Shown: one piece after another, positions 29,630 through 56,678 of the stretch
Layout: the number at the start of each line of letters is the position of its first letter
Numbering within the stretch: the stretch's first letter is position 1
IMG/VR virus record: IMGVR_UViG_3300032334_001259
Coordinates: 274,436 to 338,435 of that record
Length of the DNA stretch: 64,000 nucleotides
Reading direction: 5' to 3' (one strand)
The notes under the pieces: generated by a model
Database searches by the model: none
What the model was told of the DNA's origin: nothing
Seen by the model: the letters and a program-made list of their open reading frames with translations, nothing else
Program-made: the position numbers and the translations under genes

Positions 29630-31675
29630 TTACTTGGTGCTGGTTCTGTAAACAGTATCCCAACCAGCGCCTGGTGGGTTTGCAGCCATTTCTTCACAAC
29701 GTTCAATCCACATATCATAATATCCATCCATTTGCCCGTCAAATTGACCTTTAATTTTTTTACAAATTTCTATTGCACTTGTAAATCTTTGAGCACGATA
29801 GTCATCCATCATGTGTTTATGATTAGTTTTAGCAGCAAGATATGCAATTCTATCACTGCGTTGTTCTAATACTGTAAAGATATCAACACCTTCTTTTTTA
29901 CCTTTAACCGCAATGCAGTCTAATTCAAGTGTAAAGTAATCATCTTTTACATATTCATTTGTCTTTGGTCCAATAACCATAGCAACATGATATGGTTTAC
30001 TTTGCCCTTCTAAACGTGAAGCAAGATTAACGCCATCACCAAGACAAGTATAATCAAATCGCTGGCTACTACCCATGTTACCAACGACGACAGTAGCAGT
30101 GTTGATACCAAGTCCCATTCCAAAAGGTGGGACTCCCTCTTTGGCAACTTCTTCATTAAACGCATTTAAACTTCCTAACATTTGTAGTGCTGTCTTTACA
30201 GCGTTCTTGGCATGATCTGCATCATCAAGTGGTGCGTTCCAAAATGCCATTTGTGCATCACCGATATATTTGTCAAGTGTGCCTTCATTCTCTAATATCT
30301 TAGCAGTCATCGCTGTCATATAGCGGTTCATTATTTTGGTAAGACCTTGAACGTCACTACCGTAATGCTCAGAAATGCTAGTAAAACCCCTAACATCGGT
30401 AAATATAATTGATAACTCACGTGACTCTCCTCCCAATGCTAATAGTTCTGGATTCTTTTGAAGTTTTTCAACCATTGCAGGTGAAAGATAAGTTCCAAAT
30501 TGTTTCTTTATTTGTTGCTTTTGTAAGAACTCACTGACGAACTTAACACCGTAGGCATGCAAAGCGACCAAGATGATTCCAGCAACAGGAGCGGTTGCGT
30601 CCCATAACTGTAAAGCGTGATTAAACTGATAGAAAGAAAAAGCAATACTGCCGCCGACCAATACAATAACCGAACCAAGCCCAACATATACCCACCTCGT
30701 CAAGAATAATAATAACAGTCCACCAATTACGAGTGCAATAAGTTCTGCACCTTCTGCATAACTTGGACGTTCAATGTTAACCTTATTTGCCAACGTAGCA
30801 ATAATCTTTGCTTGTATATCTTGTGGATATACTGCACCAACAGCAGTAGGAACAGGGTTTGCAATACCAGCAGCACTAACACCAACAATAACAATTGCGC
30901 CATCAAACTTTTCTGGCATATTTGTAACGCTTACTTGTTTGTGTTGTTGACTTAAATCAATCCATACACGACCTAAACTATCAGTTGTGAATATATTTTT
31001 ACCAATACCAAGTTTATCAATTCCAAGTTCATTTAACTTAACTTTCATATTCTTTTCATTATAAAGAACACGAAGTGTTTCAAGACCGATTGTAGGATAA
31101 AGTTTACCACCACTGCCAACAAGCAGCGGAATACGACGATTAACACCATCTATTTCAGGAAATACGTTTGTTGTTCCAACACCAATTGCACTATTTTCTA
31201 AATCTGGAATGTTGGCAATAACACCAGGATAATTGTAAATTCTATCAATAAAATTACTGTTGACAATGGCGGCACCATTTGGGCGTGGTGTGTTCTTGCC
31301 TACGCTACTTGGAATATTACTTAAAATTACTGGATGATTTTTAAGAGTTTCAGCAAGTGCAGCGTCACCACCTTGGCGGTCTGCTTCTGGCATTAACACT
31401 GTCCAAACAACAATGCTTGCACCACGTGCATAAATGTCGTTAATTATATCCGCATATATCTGTCTATTAAACGGCCATTGTCCATACTTGTTAAGTGCGG
31501 CTTCATCAATATTAACTGTATAAATTGGGTTTTCAGTTTGTGTTTTATTTGTGATAAGTTGGTCAAAGTATTTTAACTTGACGCTTTCAACAAATGTAGG
31601 TGATGAAACTTTTATGGCAACTACGATTGCCAATGTTATGAGTGCAGTCCATGGGCTTAATAGAATTTTTTTCAT
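29630..31675 (-). CDS. CHASE2-domain class III adenylate/guanylate cyclase
   Basis: IDEAAL..GQWPFNR and DGVNRRIPL (CHASE2); 3 TM; FTDVRGFT, DKYIGDAQMAFWNAP, GNMGS..RFDYT..GDGVNLASRLEG, VKGK. Confidence 0.93.
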   Translation of the reverse strand: MKKILLSPWTALITLAIVVAIKVSSPTFVESVKLKYFDQLITNKTQTENPIYTVNIDEAALNKYGQWPFNRQIYADIINDIYARGASIVVWTVLMPEADRQGGDAALAETLKNHPVILSNIPSSVGKNTPRPNGAAIVNSNFIDRIYNYPGVIANIPDLENSAIGVGTTNVFPEIDGVNRRIPLLVGSGGKLYPTIGLETLRVLYNEKNMKVKLNELGIDKLGIGKNIFTTDSLGRVWIDLSQQHKQVSVTNMPEKFDGAIVIVGVSAAGIANPVPTAVGAVYPQDIQAKIIATLANKVNIERPSYAEGAELIALVIGGLLLLFLTRWVYVGLGSVIVLVGGSIAFSFYQFNHALQLWDATAPVAGIILVALHAYGVKFVSEFLQKQQIKKQFGTYLSPAMVEKLQKNPELLALGGESRELSIIFTDVRGFTSISEHYGSDVQGLTKIMNRYMTAMTAKILENEGTLDKYIGDAQMAFWNAPLDDADHAKNAVKTALQMLGSLNAFNEEVAKEGVPPFGMGLGINTATVVVGNMGSSQRFDYTCLGDGVNLASRLEGQSKPYHVAMVIGPKTNEYVKDDYFTLELDCIAVKGKKEGVDIFTVLEQRSDRIAYLAAKTNHKHMMDDYRAQRFTSAIEICKKIKGQFDGQMDGYYDMWIERCEEMAANPPGAGWDTVYRTSTK

Positions 31676-31698
31676 GGTAATATTTACCCAAGAAAAAA

Positions 31699-31722
31699 CC
31701 CCGTAAATTTCTTTACGGGGTC
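31699..31722. terminator. intrinsic terminator-like hairpin
   Basis: ACCCCGTAAA-TTTC-TTTACGGGGT with U-tract on minus strand. Confidence 0.7.
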
Positions 31723-31730
31723 TTATTAAA

Positions 31731-33608
31731 TTAAAATTCAAAGACTTTTTCTAAATTATCAGAAATTAAAATACCATCTTCAATTTCTTTAACTTTTACT
31801 TTAAGTTGCTTTGTGCAGTCAGTTAAATCATAAATTAAACTATCCGCATGAGTAGTAAGTGAAACTGGGTGCAATGCCTTTTCAATTTCTTCTTGATCAT
31901 ACCCAATTCGTTTCTTTTTTGCCATTGAGTAAACCACCGCACGAGTAACTAACCATGCCATTTCATTAGATGCAATTTCTTTTGCTGCATCTTTTATTTT
32001 TTCAAATATTTCTTCTTCTCTGGTTTGATATTCTGCAACTAGTTCTTCTACTGCCTTATCTACAACTTCATACATGCAATTTACATAAATTGCCTGATCT
32101 TCAATATATTCTGCAGCACGATGTTCTAAACTTGTAGCACTTGCTTTTTCTAAATCATCTTCTGTTCTAATAAATTGAATTGCAGGCACTGTGGCGGCAA
32201 TTTGAAAATTACTGCCTGGCACATATGGAATTTGTTTTGTTTTAGGACTTTTTACAGCGTTGAAACTATTGCCAGCACCTTTTTTCTTACTAGGTGCCAA
32301 GAATCCTGTTTGCCCTTTATCTCTTGTTACGGTAACCATAAGTTCATCAAGTAATTGTTGTGCACGTTTAGTAATATCTTCACTACTGACATTTGATGGT
32401 GCATATTCTCTAATTTTTTCTTTAAACCATTCAGGCATATTTTCACGAATTTCACGTGCATATTCTAACATTTGAATTTCAGTTTTTTCAGCATTTGGTT
32501 TTAATATTTTTTGACGATACTGATCTGGTTGTACATTGCTTTCGTCTGGCAACTCAACAAAAATGCGAAAATATCTAGCACTGTATAAAACACCTAATGC
32601 ACCTGCAATCTTTTTCCATTTACTATCAGTTGCAACATCATAAATTTCATTTTTATAAACAAGACCACTAAAGGAAGCAACAGTAGCATAACCTAATGCA
32701 GTAGTAGTTGGTTTATCTTGGTTAGCATATCCTGAAAAACCACTTGGACCATCATAAACATACCAAATTTTTATACCACTTCCATTTTTGTCATTAACAA
32801 ATTCTTGAATAACCTTATCGGGTTTTGACATAGAAGTATGTGTAATATGTTCTAAAATTGTTAAGAATCGTATATTAAGATGTTTATGTTTTGAAAAACC
32901 AACTTCTAATCGCAAACTGACGGTATTTGGAATTCGGAAAAAACGACGATACATTTGATTGATTAACCATGCACTAGGTTTCTGTTCTTCACCATCATAG
33001 GGACGTTCAACCGTATTTTGATTAGGATTATTACCACAAAGCACAATTGCTGTCCAATCTTCATTGGTATCCCATGGTATTGTTGCAAGTCCAGTAATAT
33101 CCCAAACATCCTTATACCCAGTTGGACTTTCACCATCTGTTTCTACAAAATCATAACGGCAATAATTTGCTTGTCCTTTGCTATTAATTTCTTTTCGTAA
33201 AAGTGAAATGGAAACTTTCTTATTCTTACATGAAATCCAAATCATTCCTTCTTGATTTACACCCATTGCTGTAACTTTTGCGCCGATACCAAAATTTTGA
33301 TCAAGGCGTTGAATTTTGTTGAGTGATGATGATAAATTAGTAACTTCTCGCAATTCTTTGGCAGACATACCAGTGCCATTATTCCAGAAAGTAAGTTTTT
33401 TTATATTAAAACCAAAATCACCAAAAACATTTTCGTTAAATCCAAAAACAGAAGGATCAGTTTCTAGTATTTGAATTTTTGGTTCTTTTGCTGTGATAGA
33501 TGCTTCAATGGAATTTTGAATTAATTCTCGTATCATCATTTCACTTGGGGCTTGTTCAATTGTACGAGTAATAAGATAAGACGTATTTGTAACGTTTAAT
33601 GCAGTCAT
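31731..33608 (-). CDS. GHKL (Hsp90/MORC-like) ATPase domain protein
   Basis: IRELIQNSIEA, NNGTGMS, FGIGAK, WTAIVL. Confidence 0.8.
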   Translation of the reverse strand: MTALNVTNTSYLITRTIEQAPSEMMIRELIQNSIEASITAKEPKIQILETDPSVFGFNENVFGDFGFNIKKLTFWNNGTGMSAKELREVTNLSSSLNKIQRLDQNFGIGAKVTAMGVNQEGMIWISCKNKKVSISLLRKEINSKGQANYCRYDFVETDGESPTGYKDVWDITGLATIPWDTNEDWTAIVLCGNNPNQNTVERPYDGEEQKPSAWLINQMYRRFFRIPNTVSLRLEVGFSKHKHLNIRFLTILEHITHTSMSKPDKVIQEFVNDKNGSGIKIWYVYDGPSGFSGYANQDKPTTTALGYATVASFSGLVYKNEIYDVATDSKWKKIAGALGVLYSARYFRIFVELPDESNVQPDQYRQKILKPNAEKTEIQMLEYAREIRENMPEWFKEKIREYAPSNVSSEDITKRAQQLLDELMVTVTRDKGQTGFLAPSKKKGAGNSFNAVKSPKTKQIPYVPGSNFQIAATVPAIQFIRTEDDLEKASATSLEHRAAEYIEDQAIYVNCMYEVVDKAVEELVAEYQTREEEIFEKIKDAAKEIASNEMAWLVTRAVVYSMAKKKRIGYDQEEIEKALHPVSLTTHADSLIYDLTDCTKQLKVKVKEIEDGILISDNLEKVFEF

Positions 33609-48081: not shown

Positions 48082-48648
48082 TCAAGAGAAAATTTCAGGG
48101 TATAAACTAGCAATATGGAATTGTTGGTCAGAATTAATATAATTTCTTATATGAGGAATTATATTGTTTGCCATTATTTCGTGCCCACGAGGACTAAAGT
48201 GATTTAGTCTTTTATCATTGTTTTTGTAATCCCATGTAGGATCATCAGCTTTACTGCAAATCATTAATCCACCAGGTGCAAGAAACCACAGACCATAATC
48301 TTTATCTAAAAAACCATGTTCAAAACAAGGAATATTAATCATTTTAATATTTCTTATTTTACATTGTTCTTGCATATCTTTGATTAGTAATCGTTGAATA
48401 GTTTTAGCAAATTCAATATCAGCCAATCCTTCATTATACAATCTTGTAAATTCAGTATGGCATACTATTATAACATCTGGTTGTGGGACTAAAGTTTTAA
48501 TAAAATTATCATAAATTTTATACTGACTTTGTCCTCTAAATCCATAACAACTTATCATTTCAAGATTAAGTTCATTACATACTCGTTCTATCCAAGTGTT
48601 TTTGTAACTGTATGTAAAACTATCACCTGTAATTAATATACGCATCAA
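48082..48648 (-). CDS. SGNH/GDSL-like protein
   Basis: TGDSF, GQSQ, NHFSPRGH. Confidence 0.65.
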   Translation of the reverse strand: MMRILITGDSFTYSYKNTWIERVCNELNLEMISCYGFRGQSQYKIYDNFIKTLVPQPDVIIVCHTEFTRLYNEGLADIEFAKTIQRLLIKDMQEQCKIRNIKMINIPCFEHGFLDKDYGLWFLAPGGLMICSKADDPTWDYKNNDKRLNHFSPRGHEIMANNIIPHIRNYINSDQQFHIASLYPEIFS

Positions 48649-50108
48649 AATATCCGCACATTATTCAACTGACTAAATCTTTGGGCATCTTCCCATGTAT
48701 TCACCAATGGTTCACCCTTGATATTCAAGCTAGTGTTTAGCAACATTGGACAACGAGTTCTACTATACCATGCTTCCAATATTTTATACATAATACTTGG
48801 AGTAGGTTGGTCAATAGTTTGAACACGTGAAGTGCCATCAACATGACAGATTGCTGGAAAAGATTGTGGGTCTATACACGCATCTGCCCATTGCATATAA
48901 TCGTGATTAACTTGCATCTTACTATAAAAGTATTCACTAAACCAAGATTTCAATATGATTGGAGCGAATGGACGAAATGGCTCACGTTTCTTAATTTGGT
49001 TTACACGGTCTTTTACATCTGGTCCACGAGGATCAGCAATCAGCGAACGATTGCCTAGCGCACGTGGTCCAAACTCTGCACGACCATTGGCGATACCAAC
49101 AACTTGACCTGCTTCTAATGCATCAACTACATCACGCACATTTATTGTGCGATTAATATCGTGACCAAGAAACGCATGTTCTAAATGCACATGTTTTTTA
49201 GTATGATAGGTAACTGCGCCTAAACTTAAACCAGCATCACCAGGATTTGGTGGCACCCATATTTTACTAAATCCAGTAAATGTTTTTAATCGGCTATTTG
49301 CTACACAGTTGAGAGCGCAACCACCAACCAATACAAGATTATCACTGCCAATTACTTCACGAGTATAACGACAAATTGCCATTAGGTATTGTTCATATAA
49401 TGCTTGTGCAGAAGCGGCAATATCTTCTGGTTTCCAATTTTCATCTTTAGGTTTAGTCCACCAACGCATACCACGATGTAGGTTATGCTTAAACTCTATA
49501 TCAGGTGGTGACCACTGCCCAAAAAACTCGTTAAGCATTTCTTTAAGATGTCTTGGTTCACCACATGCTGCCATACCCATGACAATATATTCTTCTTCAT
49601 TAGGTTTAAACCCAAGATAATCTGTTACCGCACTATAAAAAAGTCCGATACTTTGCGGATAAACATTGTGCCAAACTCTGCTAATTTTATCACCATGTCC
49701 ACGACATATACTAGTGCACTCTAACTCACCAATCGCATCAATAACCACAACTGCTGCATCACTAAACCCACTACTATAATAACCCATAGCAGCATGTGCA
49801 CCATGATGTGGCGTTGTCACAACTGAAATATTGCCTAACCCATTGTTTTTTAAGTATTTTTTTAAGTTATAGTGTAGTGGACGCTGACCACTTATAAGGT
49901 TACGTATTGTGCGCTTCCATGGTTGTTCATACCATACTATTTTATCTGGTATACCATATTGTAACGCATCGTCAATCAATGATTCATTTAGATGTGGATC
50001 ATTCTTTACTCTGCTATACCGTTCAGCGTGACCAGCAAACAGAATGTTAGAGCCATCAACAAGAGCGATACTTGCATCGTGATTATTAGCATTGATTCCA
50101 AGAAACAT
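48645..50108 (-). CDS. carbamoyltransferase (NodU/CmcH family)
   Basis: HDAS, ERYSRVK, HHGAHA, DAIGE, EYIVMGMA, GGCALN, EFGPRALGNRS, NTSLN. Confidence 0.93.
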   Translation of the reverse strand: MFLGINANNHDASIALVDGSNILFAGHAERYSRVKNDPHLNESLIDDALQYGIPDKIVWYEQPWKRTIRNLISGQRPLHYNLKKYLKNNGLGNISVVTTPHHGAHAAMGYYSSGFSDAAVVVIDAIGELECTSICRGHGDKISRVWHNVYPQSIGLFYSAVTDYLGFKPNEEEYIVMGMAACGEPRHLKEMLNEFFGQWSPPDIEFKHNLHRGMRWWTKPKDENWKPEDIAASAQALYEQYLMAICRYTREVIGSDNLVLVGGCALNCVANSRLKTFTGFSKIWVPPNPGDAGLSLGAVTYHTKKHVHLEHAFLGHDINRTINVRDVVDALEAGQVVGIANGRAEFGPRALGNRSLIADPRGPDVKDRVNQIKKREPFRPFAPIILKSWFSEYFYSKMQVNHDYMQWADACIDPQSFPAICHVDGTSRVQTIDQPTPSIMYKILEAWYSRTRCPMLLNTSLNIKGEPLVNTWEDAQRFSQLNNVRIF

Positions 50109-53427: not shown

Positions 53428-53502
53428 TGGTGCCCAAAGAGAGGATTGAACTCCCGACCTACGCATTACAAGTGCGTTGCACTACCGCTGTGCTATTTGG
53501 GC
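53428..53502 (-). tRNA. tRNA-Thr(TGT)
   Basis: ACGCA-CTTGTAA-TGCGT, AGTTCAATCCT, ACCA. Confidence 0.93.
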
Positions 53503-53503
53503 T

Positions 53504-53863
53504 TTATTGTTTAGGAACAGTATGTCTAATACCGTCCCACTTATTTCCTACTATATCATTTTTCTGGCAGAAGTCAATAATATTTTCATAAAAACTATCA
53601 AGTTCACCATTAAATTGTCCCATCAATCCACTGGTGAGTTCCATAGCACGTTGCCAGTTACCACTTTTATATTCACGAATCATATCAATATGCATTTCTC
53701 TAAAGAATGGTAGTGTAGCCAATTCATTTACATTGCTTACTTCAACCAATGCGTGTAGTATAACTGGTTCTGGTAAACCAGGTTGCATAACTGTATCAAG
53801 TTCAAGTATGGTATATTTGTCTGCCATGCTTTTAGCAGTTGCCGCATCAAAAATAATATTCAT
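53504..53863 (-). CDS. stand-alone homologue of the adenylate cyclase C-terminal region
   Basis: Aligns by eye to the last ~110 aa of 29630..31675. Confidence 0.7.
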   Translation of the reverse strand: MNIIFDAATAKSMADKYTILELDTVMQPGLPEPVILHALVEVSNVNELATLPFFREMHIDMIREYKSGNWQRAMELTSGLMGQFNGELDSFYENIIDFCQKNDIVGNKWDGIRHTVPKQ

Positions 53864-53904
53864 AACACAATTATATATAATTATTATTGGAAAACAATAA
53901 AAAA

Positions 53905-54681
53905 ATGCACTTTGATTTAGTTAGTGATCTACATGAAAATTTCTGGCCACCTGAAAAAAACTTGAAATGGGAAGGTCTTGGAACAAGTTTAGTATGCGTT
54001 GTTGCTGGTGATATCAGCAATGATTGGGATTATTCATATAATAAACTTGTAGAAATCGGTGAACATTACCGTCATGTTATATTTGTTGATGGCAATCATG
54101 AACATGGTCATAAGCCTGATTTACACCACCATAATAATGAATTTCAATTACGTATTGCTGAACATAATCATATTACATATTTGCATAAAAGTGTAATTGT
54201 ATTAGATGATGTTGCATTTGTTGGCTGTAACGGTTGGTGGACATATGATTTTTGTATGCCAGAAGTCACTAACTTTGAATGTTGGGATCACCTTATCAGT
54301 GAAGGTTGGAGTGATGATAAGTTAGCAGAAATTATGGCAGTTGCTAAAGTTGAAGCTAAAATGCTGTATACTCAAATAGAAACTTTTAATAATGACCCAA
54401 GAATAAATCATATTGTAGTTGTAACGCATACCTCACCAAAACGTAAATTTAGATACATTACTCCTGAAATGCATGTTGCACACTATGGTCGTGCTGGTAG
54501 TAGTATGATGCAAACAGTTCTATTAGCCAACATCAATAAGAAAATTAAAGCATGGTGTTTTGGTCATTGTCATCACGAAATAGATGAAACAATAGATGGT
54601 ATAAGATATATTTGCCATCCACGTGGTCGTAGTGATGAAGGTATTGGAAATATCTATTTTCCAAAATTAGTTCAATTTTAA
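53905..54681 (+). CDS. calcineurin-like metallophosphoesterase
   Basis: SDLH, AGDI, GNHEH, TH, FGHCH. Confidence 0.88.
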   Translation: MHFDLVSDLHENFWPPEKNLKWEGLGTSLVCVVAGDISNDWDYSYNKLVEIGEHYRHVIFVDGNHEHGHKPDLHHHNNEFQLRIAEHNHITYLHKSVIVLDDVAFVGCNGWWTYDFCMPEVTNFECWDHLISEGWSDDKLAEIMAVAKVEAKMLYTQIETFNNDPRINHIVVVTHTSPKRKFRYITPEMHVAHYGRAGSSMMQTVLLANINKKIKAWCFGHCHHEIDETIDGIRYICHPRGRSDEGIGNIYFPKLVQF

Positions 54682-55004
54682 GATTCTGGTTCTATCTTAA
54701 CAGCAAGAGGAAAGTTGTTTGTTCTTGCAAGTAGTGTTGTTTCTACTGCTTTACTTTCAGCAATCTCAAATGGTAATACAGCAACCATTGCACTACCTTC
54801 TTCATGAATCTTAACTGTTAATTCTTGTGCGCTATCAAAGTTATGATCAAAGATTTCTTGTAATACTGCGATAACAAAATCAACAGTAGTTACATTATCA
54901 TTCATAAAAATAACCTTAAACTTTGGTGGTGGAGTAAGGTCTTTTTTAGGTGTAATTTTAATTTTTGTGCGTGTTTGAACGTCTGCTGTCATTTTGCCCA
55001 TCAT
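54678..55004 (-). CDS. clpS: ClpS N-degron adaptor
   Basis: PPKFKVIFMNDNVTTVDFVI..L..IF, IHEEG, EIAESK, FPL. Confidence 0.92.
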   Translation of the reverse strand: MMGKMTADVQTRTKIKITPKKDLTPPPKFKVIFMNDNVTTVDFVIAVLQEIFDHNFDSAQELTVKIHEEGSAMVAVLPFEIAESKAVETTLLARTNNFPLAVKIEPES

Positions 55005-55014
55005 TTATATTTAC

Positions 55015-55038
55015 CACAGTGGGCTTTCGCCCACTGTG
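55015..55038. terminator. GNRA-capped hairpin after hsp20
   Basis: CACAGTGGGC-GAAA-GCCCACTGTG on minus strand. Confidence 0.55.
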
Positions 55039-55058
55039 ATTTTATATTACCATAACTA

Positions 55059-55493
55059 TTAAGATTTTGCAATAGCTATTTTCTTTGGCTTTTGTGACTC
55101 TGGAATATGAAATTCCAATTTAATCACAAGCAATCCATTCTGCATCTTGGCAGTTTTGACTTCCATATTGTCAGCCAAGTTAAATGTACGGACAAACTTG
55201 CGACTTGCAATACCACGGAAAATATAATCCGTAGGATTTTCATTCTTGATTTCACCAGTAATTACAAGTTGATTGTCCTTTAACGTGATGTCAATATCAT
55301 CATCGCTAAATCCACTTGCCGCAATTTCAATTTCGTAGTCAGTATCACTATTGCGGATAATGTTATATGGTGGATAACTTTGCTGAACTTGCACTGAATT
55401 TACACGAAGCATATCATCAAATAGGCGTTCAAAACCAATTGCAGTGCGATTAAAATGGTCAAAACCATCAAATACTTTAAGTAGATTACTCAT
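55059..55493 (-). CDS. ibpA: small heat-shock protein Hsp20 (IbpA-like)
   Basis: IGFERLFD, YPPYNI, AASGF, RGIASRKF.R.F.L, NGLL.I. Confidence 0.93.
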   Translation of the reverse strand: MSNLLKVFDGFDHFNRTAIGFERLFDDMLRVNSVQVQQSYPPYNIIRNSDTDYEIEIAASGFSDDDIDITLKDNQLVITGEIKNENPTDYIFRGIASRKFVRTFNLADNMEVKTAKMQNGLLVIKLEFHIPESQKPKKIAIAKS

Positions 55494-55552
55494 TTTGTTT
55501 CTCCTTCTAAAAGCGAGTAAGTTAGACGACCCAACTTTGGCATCGTCTAACC
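55494..55552 (-). promoter_or_regulatory. ROSE-like RNA thermometer in hsp20 5' UTR
   Basis: 5' hairpin, then CUCGCUU-UUAG-AAGGAG: U(U/C)GCU pairs SD with bulged G. Confidence 0.7.
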
Positions 55553-55577
55553 TTATATAGCATTTATTTTAAATTTG

Positions 55578-56678
55578 TCAAGGGGTTTTAGAAAAAATAT
55601 TATTAACTTGATTATTAACACTTATAAAAGTGCAACGCTTGCTTAATTCCTTAAGACGGCGGGCACCAACATAAGTTAATGTGCTACGAACACCACCAAG
55701 AACGTCTTGAATAACATCATTTACATCACCACGATAAGGAACTAATACTTCCTTGCCTTCTGCGGCACGGTATGTTTTAAGACCACCGCTATGCTTATCA
55801 TTAGCGGCACGACTGCTCATACCATAGAATTGAACAAACTTACGTTCTTCAATTACATGATTATGTCCATCCTGACTTATTTCATTTGTTTTATAATATT
55901 TGGTAATAACATCGCCGCCACCTTGATCACAGCCAGCTAACATTCCACCAAGCATTACGAAGTCAGCACCACCAGCAAAGGCTTTAGCAACATCACCAGG
56001 ACAAGTGCAACCACCATCACTAATAATATGTCCACCAAGACCGTGAGCAGCATCTGCACATTCAATAACCGCTGATAGTTGCGGATACCCCACTCCAGTT
56101 TTGATACGAGTAGTGCATACACTACCAGGACCAATACCAACTTTAACAATATCAACGCCACTTAAAATAAGTTCCTCTGTCATTTCTGGAGTAACAACAT
56201 TACCTGCAATAATGGTAACCCCTTGATTTTCTTGACGAAATTTACGAACAAATCCAATAAATCGTTCAGTATAACCATTGGCTACGTCAATGCATACAAT
56301 TTTAATATTACCTTCGGGTAACTTACTTTTTACAAGTTTATATTTTTCATAATCTTCATCTTTGATACCAAGACCATATGCCCAAAGGTCATTGATCTTG
56401 TATCCAGTGCGACCAATCCATAGGATAATTTCTTCTACAGTATAATTCTTGCGAAGTGCTGTCATCAAACCATGTTCAGCAAGTGCTTCTGCCATTGTAA
56501 ACGTACCAACACCATCCATATTCGCCGCAATAATTGGTTTGTTTGACCATTGCATACCACTATTACGAAAGATAAATTTACGGTCAAGACTAACTTCATC
56601 ACGACTTACCAGTGTGCTACGTTTTGGCACAATTAGAACATCACTAAAATCAAGTTTAGTGTCATTAATAATACGCAT
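55578..56678 (-). CDS. guaC: GMP reductase
   Basis: [53 protein letters not shown]. Confidence 0.95.

What the first reader, a model, noticed from the sequence alone, without database searches (positions are those of the whole stretch)
53504..54681. Stand-alone copy of the cyclase C-terminal tail, divergent from a phosphoesterase
Seen: DKYTILELDTV vs DDYFTLELDCI; HIDMIREYKSGNWQRAMELTSGLMGQFNGELDSFYE vs HKHMMDDYRAQRFTSAIEICKKIKGQFDGQMDGYYD; WDGIRHTVPK vs WDTVYRTSTK. The catalytic core is absent. The neighbour is a calcineurin-like phosphoesterase, the fold of CpdA. Inference: an inhibitor or adaptor for phage or host cyclases plus a signal eraser, completing a cyclic-nucleotide circuit or countering cyclase-based defence.
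Basis: partly seen in the sequence, partly recalled or inferred. Interest (0 to 1): 0.65.

Follow-up and report, generated by a model that had tools for sequence, protein, structure and literature searches.

The report
Free-standing copy of cyclase tail module
A freshwater jumbo phage carries a conserved 119-residue gene that is a catalytically empty, self-folding copy of the last ~115 residues of its own membrane-bound nucleotide cyclase; it belongs to a large, unnamed, apparently phage-only protein family whose role (probably tuning cyclase signalling) is still untested.

Summary
ORF 53504..53863 (-), 119 aa, aligns over its whole length to residues 588-703 of the window's CHASE2 + class III cyclase (29630..31741, -): 26% identity, E = 6e-12. 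Profile, genome and structure searches confirm it.

It is more than a "tail". It comprises the last beta-alpha-beta-beta of the catalytic domain plus a three-helix C-terminal extension. All catalytic residues and the KGK phosphate loop are missing.

It is a real gene. It has a conserved start, dN/dS of 0.1-0.4 and 22 syntenic orthologues. A profile search gave 333 representatives, nearly all stand-alone proteins of 95-135 aa from viral contigs. AF2 pLDDT is 94. No Pfam, PHROG or PDB entry describes it.

In a sample of bacterial genomes the module was found essentially only as the C-terminal end of 650-1200 aa cyclases (113 of 301 sampled Alphaproteobacteria).

The neighbouring gene is a generic metallophosphoesterase, not CpdA (20 bits against a cut-off of 225). 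It also occurs in jumbo phages that show no cyclase match. In other lineages carrying the small gene, an exonuclease gene takes its place.

The "inhibitor plus eraser circuit" is therefore unsupported. A role as a regulatory mimic of the cyclase tail is plausible but untested, and co-folding gave no verdict.

The parts
53504..53863 (-). Small gene (119 aa, P0001): stand-alone copy of the cyclase C-terminal module. Predicted elements: strand 2-4, helix 7-13, strands 18-26 and 34-40, helices 45-67, 70-80 and 89-105.
29630..31741 (-). CHASE2 + class III nucleotide cyclase (703 aa from TTG). The probable true start is the ATG at residue 23, about 31675, because relatives align from residues 20-23.
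29633..29980 (-). The part of the cyclase gene (residues 588-703) that is homologous to the small gene: the end of the catalytic domain, including the KGK loop, plus the helical tail.
53887..54681 (+). Metallophosphoesterase (264 aa from TTG; the conserved ATG at 53905 gives 258 aa). Motifs DxH, GD, GNHE, H and GHxH are all present. Substrate unknown.
53428..53502 (-). tRNA-Thr (anticodon TGT). It begins one base after the stop codon of the small gene, so it is probably on the same transcript.
53870..53881 (.). Perfect 12-bp AT palindrome in the 41-bp gap between the two divergent start codons. It is conserved in most related loci. It may be a shared promoter or operator element; this is an inference.

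Best explanation
SHOWN: ORF 53504..53863 is a real, selected gene. It encodes an autonomously folding copy of the C-terminal module of CHASE2-type class III cyclases: the last strand-helix-strand-strand of the catalytic domain, packed against a three-helix tail. It lacks both metal-binding Asp residues, the substrate-specifying residues, the Asn/Arg pair and the KGK phosphate loop, so it cannot be a cyclase. It belongs to one large, unnamed family of 95-135 aa proteins. On the tree these form a single well-supported split from all cyclase tails. Their automatic taxon labels are mostly viral, and in 301 sampled bacterial genomes no intact stand-alone copy was seen. There the module sits essentially always at the end of full-length cyclases. 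What the small proteins keep is the structural core of the module (LELD on the second strand of the small protein, an invariant His, Tyr, Trp, the G-x-(F/W)-x-G...D-x-(F/Y)-Y stretch, and a C-terminal Trp). The small gene and a full-length cyclase with the same module lie together in this genome and in 9 of 12 other related contigs that carry the cyclase. INFERRED (most likely mechanism): the free module acts as a mimic or competitor of the cyclase tail. It would bind whatever the tail binds in cis or in trans: a regulatory partner, or the tail or catalytic domain of the phage or host cyclase. That would change cAMP/cGMP output during infection. The face of its small sheet that is buried against the catalytic core in the enzyme should be exposed in the free protein and is the natural docking surface. 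Confidence in identity and reality of the gene is about 0.95. Confidence in this mechanism is about 0.35, which is the figure given below.
For: Homology: (the only PHROG hit by family members is the phage cyclase phrog_35576). Real gene: conserved MNIIF start and no frame breaks in 22 loci; dN/dS 0.1-0.4 with dS near saturation. Size of the family and its stand-alone form: 333 hits at E<=1e-3 and 145 at 1e-10, nearly all 95-135 aa and matched from residue 1; nearest Atlas clusters are 55-98% Viruses among members with a taxon label. Fold: pLDDT 94.4, pTM 0.86. The cyclase fragment 430-703 has the same order of elements, with its tail at pLDDT 93-98. 41 residues fit CyaB 3R5G at rmsd 1.6 A. Loss of the KGK loop and retention of LELD/H/Y/W: group consensus. 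Single origin: the split of small proteins from all tails has SH-aLRT 98 on the quick tree. Bacteria: 113 of 301 Alphaproteobacteria have the module, almost all at the end of ORFs of several hundred to ~1750 aa (mostly 650-1200); the two ~120-aa hits in G319, the only short ones inspected, are a frameshifted cyclase and a relic. Co-occurrence with the cyclase: G000, G003, G004 and 7 of 10 large contigs, 7-13 kb apart.
Against: There is no direct evidence of binding. Co-occurrence may only reflect shared ancestry of collinear genomes. The cyclase exists without the small gene in Melnitz (a complete genome), in G007 (92% complete) and in G006, so the small protein is not needed for cyclase function. 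The conserved residues look structural rather than like an obvious binding site. The function of the tail in the full-length enzymes is itself unknown: no solved structure covers it, and two literature searches found no paper on it. The small family is far more divergent than the phage cyclase tails (branch lengths), which fits a drift away from the cyclase-linked role just as well.
Confidence: 0.35

Rival explanations
1. The module has been co-opted for a job unrelated to cyclases. It would be a small protein-binding (TPR/MIT-like) adaptor working with its constant neighbours: the Hsp20-ClpS(-ClpX/Hsp70) proteostasis cluster and/or the divergent phosphoesterase.
For: In every lineage examined, including distant ones (about 25-32% identity to P0001), the gene lies just downstream of Hsp20-ClpS, often with ClpX, Hsp70 or S21 further upstream. 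The helical part resembles TPR/MIT three-helix units, Z 5-6.2. The family is very divergent from the cyclase tails and forms its own clade. Some cyclase-bearing phages lack it.
Against: These genomes are collinear over tens of kb, so constant neighbours are expected without any functional link. The genes between ClpS and the small gene differ between lineages (MPE versus exonuclease plus a short ORF). The TPR/MIT similarity is within the tool's stated background range for helical models. The strands inherited from the catalytic domain and the LELD motif are the best-conserved part, which points to a retained cyclase-type architecture.
Confidence: 0.3
2. One reading: the small protein inhibits or adapts cyclases, and the neighbouring phosphoesterase is a CpdA-like cNMP phosphodiesterase. 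Together they would erase cyclic-nucleotide signals or counter cyclase-based defence such as Pycsar.
For: The divergent MPE/small-gene pair is conserved down to 35-45% MPE identity. A conserved palindrome sits in the 41-bp gap, suggesting joint control. The MPE has an intact metal-binding motif set. One phage homologue is annotated by its depositors as a cAMP phosphodiesterase (H12).
Against: The CpdA equivalog model gives 20.2 bits against a cut-off of 225; the best NCBIfam match is 'putative phosphoesterase' TIGR03729, below its cut-off. No PDB relative is found by sequence. MPE homologues occur in 23 cultured phage records (Atu_ph07, phage G, Rak2-like phages and others), none of which is among the records with a cyclase match. 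The P0030 and P0060 lineages have an exonuclease gene at that position. P0001 has no PADLOC match, and its kin are sensor cyclases, not PycC.
Confidence: 0.1
3. It is a decaying 3' fragment of a duplicated cyclase gene with no function of its own.
For: Such relics exist in bacteria (G319: a frameshifted cyclase and a 104-aa remnant), and short partial cyclases occur in the hit list (P0116, P0149).
Against: Conserved start codon and length in 22 loci, dN/dS 0.1-0.4, hundreds of divergent family members without frame breaks, a confident autonomous fold, and a single ancient origin.
Confidence: 0.02

Closest known systems
C-terminal module of CHASE2-type class III adenylate/guanylate cyclases. 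Phage examples: phrog_35576 and Melnitz gene MelnitzEXVC044M_104. Bacterial examples: many Alphaproteobacteria, such as Marivibrio, Aestuariispira, Tardiphaga and Pelagibacteraceae MAGs.
   Same: Same sequence family (E 1e-10 to 1e-26 with the small-protein profile), same order of secondary-structure elements, and same 3-D arrangement (TM 0.82 over 116 residues). LELD, His, Tyr, Trp and the C-terminal Trp are shared.
   Different: P0001 is free-standing. It lacks the sensor, the membrane segments and the catalytic core, and it has lost the KGK loop and the terminal W-D-G-V...K signature in much of the family. It forms its own clade.
Catalytic domain of solved class III cyclases (CyaB of P. aeruginosa 3R5G; CyaC of Spirulina 1WC0)
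   Same: The first ~41 residues of P0001 superpose on the last strand-helix-strand-strand of CyaB at rmsd 1.6 A.
   Different: No solved cyclase contains the helical tail: all alignments stop at about 195-200 columns. P0001 has none of the catalytic residues.
CpdA/Icc class III cAMP phosphodiesterase (for the neighbouring gene)
   Same: Same calcineurin-like metallophosphoesterase superfamily and the same metal-binding motif set.
   Different: It fails the CpdA equivalog model by a wide margin (20 against 225 bits). It belongs to a phage MPE group (phrog_1649) that is common in jumbo phages showing no cyclase match.
TPR / MIT three-helix protein-binding units
   Same: Helices 45-108 align with TPR and MIT domains, Z 5-6.2, rmsd 1.8-2.9 A over 55-62 residues.
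   Different: The scores lie within the tool's stated background for helical models. There is no sequence match, and here the helices are packed on a small sheet.
Phage proteins that interfere with nucleotide signalling (Acb1 and Apyc1 nucleases, Tad/Acb2 sponges; from general knowledge, not tested here)
   Same: The possible outcome is the same: a small phage protein altering a cyclic-nucleotide pathway.
   Different: Those proteins degrade or sequester the nucleotide. P0001 is a copy of part of the synthase itself, and no nucleotide-binding or hydrolytic feature is evident.

Membership tests
Class III nucleotidyl cyclase (Pfam PF00211), for P0001 | Two metal-binding Asp residues, the substrate-specifying Lys/Asp (or Glu/Cys) pair and the transition-state Asn/Arg pair in a ~180-residue domain | tested here: not met
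   P0001 aligns only to residues 588-703 of the cyclase. The regions that carry these residues (about 441-585) have no counterpart. There is no Pfam match.
Class III nucleotidyl cyclase (Pfam PF00211), for P0001 | Phosphate-binding Lys in the loop between the last two strands of the catalytic domain (K-G-K) | tested here: not met
   KGK is invariant in 59 phage tails and conserved in 69 bacterial tails. It is absent and variable in 107 small proteins; the corresponding stretch in P0001 reads QPGLPEP.
CHASE2 class III cyclase, for P0002 | N-terminal CHASE2 sensor domain plus a cyclase catalytic domain | tested here: met
   PF05226, E = 3.9e-37 (residues 38-342). PF00211, E = 2.2e-18 (441-617). 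phrog_35576, E = 1e-218.
Unnamed phage small-protein family (this report) | 95-135 aa, M-x-I-I-F start, L-E-L-D on the second strand, invariant His on the first long helix, G-x-(F/W)-x-G...D-x-F-Y, autonomous fold | tested here: met
   Alignments A1 and A2; profile search; AF2 pLDDT 94.4; Atlas structural neighbours at TM 0.84-0.88, all viral hypothetical proteins.
CpdA/Icc 3',5'-cAMP phosphodiesterase, for P0003 | Score above the NCBIfam equivalog cut-off (NF008359, 225 bits) | tested here: not met
   20.2 bits, and only a 70-residue stretch is matched.
Calcineurin-like metallophosphoesterase superfamily, for P0003 | Motifs D-x-H, G-D, G-N-H-(D/E), H and G-H-x-H | tested here: met
   D14-x-H16, G41-D42, G69-N70-H71-E72, H181 and G226-H227-x-H229 in the translation. 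PF00149 scores above its cut-off.
CpdA/Icc, for P0003 | Hydrolysis of 3',5'-cyclic nucleotides | not testable with these tools
   This needs an enzyme assay.
Anti-phage defence or Pycsar-type cyclase context | Match to a defence-system model | tested here: not met
   P0001 has no PADLOC match. P0002 matches PycC models only through the shared catalytic domain (residues 439-611). P0003 has one weak match, PDC-S10, 23 bits.
TPR / MIT domains, for helices 45-108 of P0001 | Structural match clearly above background, or a sequence-profile match | tested here: inconclusive
   Z is at most 6.2, and the tool's guidance is that Z under about 13 for helical models may be a common arrangement. There is no Pfam TPR or MIT hit.

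The most novel reading that the evidence does not exclude
The C-terminal ~115 residues of CHASE2 cyclases form a self-contained regulatory or partner-binding domain that nobody has described. A large clade of aquatic (jumbo) phages has released it as a free protein. The free protein would act as a decoy that reprogrammes host or phage cAMP/cGMP synthesis. That would be a new type of phage anti-signalling factor: it mimics part of the synthase rather than degrading or sequestering the nucleotide.
Probability: 0.25. Interest if true: 0.7.

Novelty: new variant of a known kind. Interest (0 to 1): 0.45.

Why it matters
The finding defines two things that have no entry in Pfam, PHROGs, NCBIfam or the PDB.

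- **A conserved C-terminal module in bacterial sensor cyclases.** It was found in 113 of 301 sampled Alphaproteobacteria, including small Pelagibacteraceae-type genomes.
- **A large phage family that is this module on its own.** The profile search gave 333 cluster representatives.

If the free module regulates cyclases, it offers two openings. It gives a handle on how CHASE2 cyclases are controlled from the cytoplasmic side. It would also be an example of a phage tuning second-messenger synthesis by domain mimicry in abundant freshwater and marine hosts.

If the module has been co-opted for another job, it is still a clean case of a new small protein born from the 3' end of an enzyme gene.

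The negative result also matters. The neighbouring phosphoesterase should not be annotated as a cAMP phosphodiesterase on present evidence.

Tried and rejected
- **Co-folding.** P0001 was co-folded with the cyclase fragment 430-703, using my own alignments A2 and A3. The score was 0.00, below the mark, and the controls were not run. This is no verdict and is used neither for nor against binding.
- **Family libraries for P0001.** Pfam, PHROGs, NCBIfam and PADLOC gave nothing meaningful. Scanning all 107 family members gave only phrog_35576 (the cyclase) for two members, plus stray single hits.
- **PDB by sequence profile and Foldseek.** No significant match.
- **VIA wide search.** Only generic TPR/MIT-like helices, within background.
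- **tblastn of P0001 against 50,697 cultured phage records.** No match. A profile search of Melnitz and HTVC008M found only the Melnitz cyclase tail.
- **The search for related loci with alignment A2 in bacterial genomes.** The alignment was too divergent for the tool. It was replaced by a tail query and by genome searches.
- **Apparent stand-alone bacterial copies in G319.** On inspection these are a frameshifted cyclase and a relic fragment.
- **Promoter/terminator scan.** There were fewer promoter-like sites than in shuffles, so it was not used.
- **The palindrome as a recurrent phage promoter motif.** 12 matches against 7.9 expected, so it is not recurrent.
- **Sequencing runs.** Only DNA (contig) holders from freshwater metagenomes, and none on record as RNA. 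Read laying was not run because contigs cannot show expression.
- **Literature.** Two searches found nothing on phage CHASE2 cyclases or their tail. The Melnitz paper (PMC9004378) contains no occurrence of the word 'cyclase'.
- **Restricted material.** No alternative genetic code was needed.

Full report
**Setting**

The window is the last 64 kb of a 338,435-bp virus record with direct terminal repeats, estimated 100% complete. It has about 35% G+C and seven tRNA genes. Its genes include ClpS, Hsp20, an IMPDH/GMP-reductase-family enzyme and a carbamoyltransferase. DNA runs that hold the stretch come from lake and other freshwater metagenomes in 12 studies; none is on record as RNA. The nearest cultured relatives of its cyclase are the OM43 phage Melnitz and the Pelagibacter phage HTVC008M.

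**Check of the observation**

The region holds three features:
- A 119-aa ORF at 53504..53863 (-), here P0001.
- A divergent 264-aa ORF at 53887..54681 (+), here P0003. The ATG at 53905 is the conserved start.
- A tRNA-Thr that begins one base after the stop codon of P0001.

The cyclase, P0002 (29630..31741, -), has a CHASE2 domain (residues 38-342) and a class III catalytic domain (441-617).

BLASTP aligns P0001 residues 3-118 with P0002 residues 588-703 at E = 6e-12. Three further results confirm the relation:
- A six-frame search of the whole genome finds only these two places.
- A profile of orthologues, searched against 1.84 billion proteins, recovers bacterial-type CHASE2 cyclases at their C-terminal ends.
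- The predicted structure of P0001 superposes on the C-terminal end of an independently modelled 686-aa viral CHASE2 cyclase (TM 0.82 over 116 residues).

**What exactly is copied**

Solved CyaB (3R5G) aligns with the cyclase up to about residue 630. The first ~40 residues of P0001 therefore correspond to the last strand-helix-strand-strand of the catalytic domain. Foldseek fits 41 residues onto CyaB at 1.6 A rmsd. Only residues ~45-119 correspond to the tail proper.

AlphaFold2 with a 107-sequence alignment gives pLDDT 94.4 and pTM 0.86 for P0001. The elements are strand 2-4, helix 7-13, strands 18-26 and 34-40, and helices 45-67, 70-80 and 89-105. The cyclase fragment 430-703 shows the same order of elements at its end, with the tail at pLDDT 93-98.

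No solved cyclase includes such a tail. The helical part resembles TPR/MIT three-helix units only at background level.

A three-group comparison covered 107 small proteins, 59 phage cyclase tails and 69 bacterial tails. All three groups share the L-E-L-D strand, an invariant His, a Tyr, a Trp, the glycine/aromatic stretch before the last helix and a C-terminal Trp. The K-G-K phosphate loop and the G..T stretch of the catalytic domain are kept only in the cyclases. P0001 also lacks everything upstream that carries the metal-binding and substrate-binding residues. It cannot be a cyclase.

**It is a real gene and a big family**

- Twenty-two viral contigs carry orthologues at 39-100% identity, with the same start (MNIIF) and the same length.
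- Pairwise dN/dS is 0.1-0.4.
- The profile search returned 333 cluster representatives at E <= 1e-3 and 145 at 1e-10. Almost all of the best 150 are stand-alone proteins of 95-135 aa matched from residue 1.
- None of those looked up carries a name other than 'hypothetical protein'.
- Neither Pfam nor PHROGs covers them.
- Atlas neighbours by sequence features and by structure are clusters of the same size, with 55-98% of labelled members from viruses.
- On a quick maximum-likelihood tree the small proteins are separated from all cyclase tails by one branch (SH-aLRT 98), with much longer internal branches than the phage cyclase tails. This indicates one old origin, not a recent duplication of this phage's own cyclase. 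Caveats: the tree uses 120 columns, it is the quick search, and the bacterial sample is limited to relatives of one query.

**Where the module occurs in cells**

A tail query found at least 554 stretches in bacterial genomes, mostly Alphaproteobacteria. With the small-protein profile, 113 of 301 sampled Alphaproteobacteria have the module, nearly always at the end of ORFs of 650-1200 aa. I inspected only the two ~120-aa hits, both in G319. One is a frameshifted cyclase and the other a 104-aa relic. I therefore describe the free form as phage-specific 'in what was searched'.

**Context**

In all 22 close loci the order is Hsp20 - ClpS - (MPE on the other strand) - small gene - a 260-aa unknown - and onwards. 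This is simply a collinear block.

Distant members keep the position after Hsp20-ClpS, with ClpX, Hsp70 or S21 further upstream. Two lineages keep the divergent MPE, at 35% and 45% identity to P0003. Two others have an Rv2179c-like exonuclease and a short ORF there instead.

A full-length cyclase with the tail is very common in this viral clade: at least 587 contigs. Of 10 large contigs chosen for having the cyclase, 7 also have the small gene, 7-13 kb away. G006, G007 (92% complete) and G009 do not. G003 and G004 have both. Melnitz has only the cyclase tail, and HTVC008M has neither tail nor small gene. The two genes often travel together, but the cyclase does not need the small gene.

**The phosphoesterase**

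P0003 has the full metallophosphoesterase motif set and matches PF00149 and phrog_1649. Against NCBIfam it reaches 69 bits for 'putative phosphoesterase' TIGR03729 (cut-off 148). It reaches only 20 bits for the CpdA equivalog (cut-off 225).

It has no PDB relative by sequence. Its homologues in cultured phages are in 23 records (Atu_ph07, phage G, Rak2-like phages, Xanthomonas and Stenotrophomonas jumbo phages, a cyanophage). None of these is among the 9 records that match the cyclase.

It is probably an active phosphoesterase of unknown substrate. Calling it a cyclic-nucleotide eraser is not justified.

**Mechanism**

What is shown is the anatomy: a free, folded, selected copy of the enzyme's C-terminal module without catalytic parts.

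The predicted geometry is the same as in the enzyme. The side of its three-stranded sheet that leans on the catalytic core in the cyclase should therefore be open in the free protein. This is an inference; I could not inspect coordinates.

The most economical reading is that the free module competes with, or substitutes for, the tail module of phage and/or host cyclases in whatever interaction that module makes. That would alter cyclic-nucleotide output. I put this at about 0.35.

The rivals:
- Co-option to a cyclase-independent role with its constant neighbours (Hsp20/ClpS/ClpX or the MPE) is nearly as likely, at 0.3.
- A dead gene fragment is essentially excluded.
- The remainder is 'something else'.

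The single co-folding job gave no verdict and is not used as evidence.

**Novelty**

The cyclase and the phosphoesterase are ordinary members of known families. The small protein is a new, unnamed family. The tail module it derives from is an undescribed domain of a widespread group of bacterial sensor cyclases. Catalytically dead, truncated paralogues acting as regulators are a known kind of thing, so I rate it a new variant of a known kind, with moderate interest.

**Limits**

- No coordinates of the models were available to me, so surface properties were not analysed.
- The tree is a quick search on few columns.
- Co-occurrence counts come from incomplete contigs.
- No RNA data were found.

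Noticed in passing
window 53428-53506: tRNA-Thr (TGT) starts one base after the TAA stop of the small gene on the same strand. It is probably co-transcribed and cut out of the 3' end of the mRNA. A near-identical 42-bp stretch matches a tRNA-Thr of Xanthomonas phage XaC1.
   Followed up: partly
window 53870-53881: Perfect 12-bp palindrome ATTATATATAAT in the 41-bp gap between the divergent start codons of the small gene and the phosphoesterase. It is conserved in most related loci and is not a recurrent motif in the window. It may be a shared promoter or operator element.
   Followed up: partly
window 31731-33608 (-): A 625-aa GHKL-type ATPase (HATPase_c_3, E = 6e-6) lies directly upstream of the cyclase gene and overlaps its annotated TTG start by 11 nt. 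In Melnitz and HTVC008M the cyclase instead follows FecR-domain and curlin-repeat genes. In a distant relative (L034) a CsgF-CsgG-FecR-curlin block lies about 2 kb downstream of the small gene.
   Followed up: no
window 54678-56678 (-) and 48645-50108 (-): Auxiliary-type genes in a row: ClpS adaptor, Hsp20, an IMPDH/GMP-reductase-family enzyme and, further on, a carbamoyltransferase. Relatives add ClpX, Hsp70 and ribosomal protein S21 in the same block.
   Followed up: no
proteins P0093, P0127, P0147, P0149: Intermediate forms exist in metagenomes: catalytic domain plus tail without CHASE2 (299 aa); a membrane segment plus catalytic domain plus tail (344 aa); and a 178-aa protein with an N-terminal hydrophobic segment plus the module without the KGK loop. 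Trimming of these cyclases may therefore have happened more than once.
   Followed up: no
L027 (G003:C1:5663-7705): The orthologous cyclase of a related phage contig has one in-frame TGA in an otherwise intact 63%-identical gene. It could be a sequencing error, a pseudogene or recoding; this was not examined.
   Followed up: no
L203 and L204 (alphaproteobacterial genome G319): A CHASE2 cyclase is split by a frameshift just before the tail. Elsewhere in the same genome an isolated 104-aa tail remnant lies next to unrelated genes. These are bacterial examples of how a free tail ORF can arise.
   Followed up: partly
L034 5177-5971 (-): The phosphoesterase orthologue of a distant relative reads G-N-D-E-H where P0003 has G-N-H-E-H, so the usual motif III His is replaced. 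That orthologue may be inactive or use a shifted ligand.
   Followed up: no
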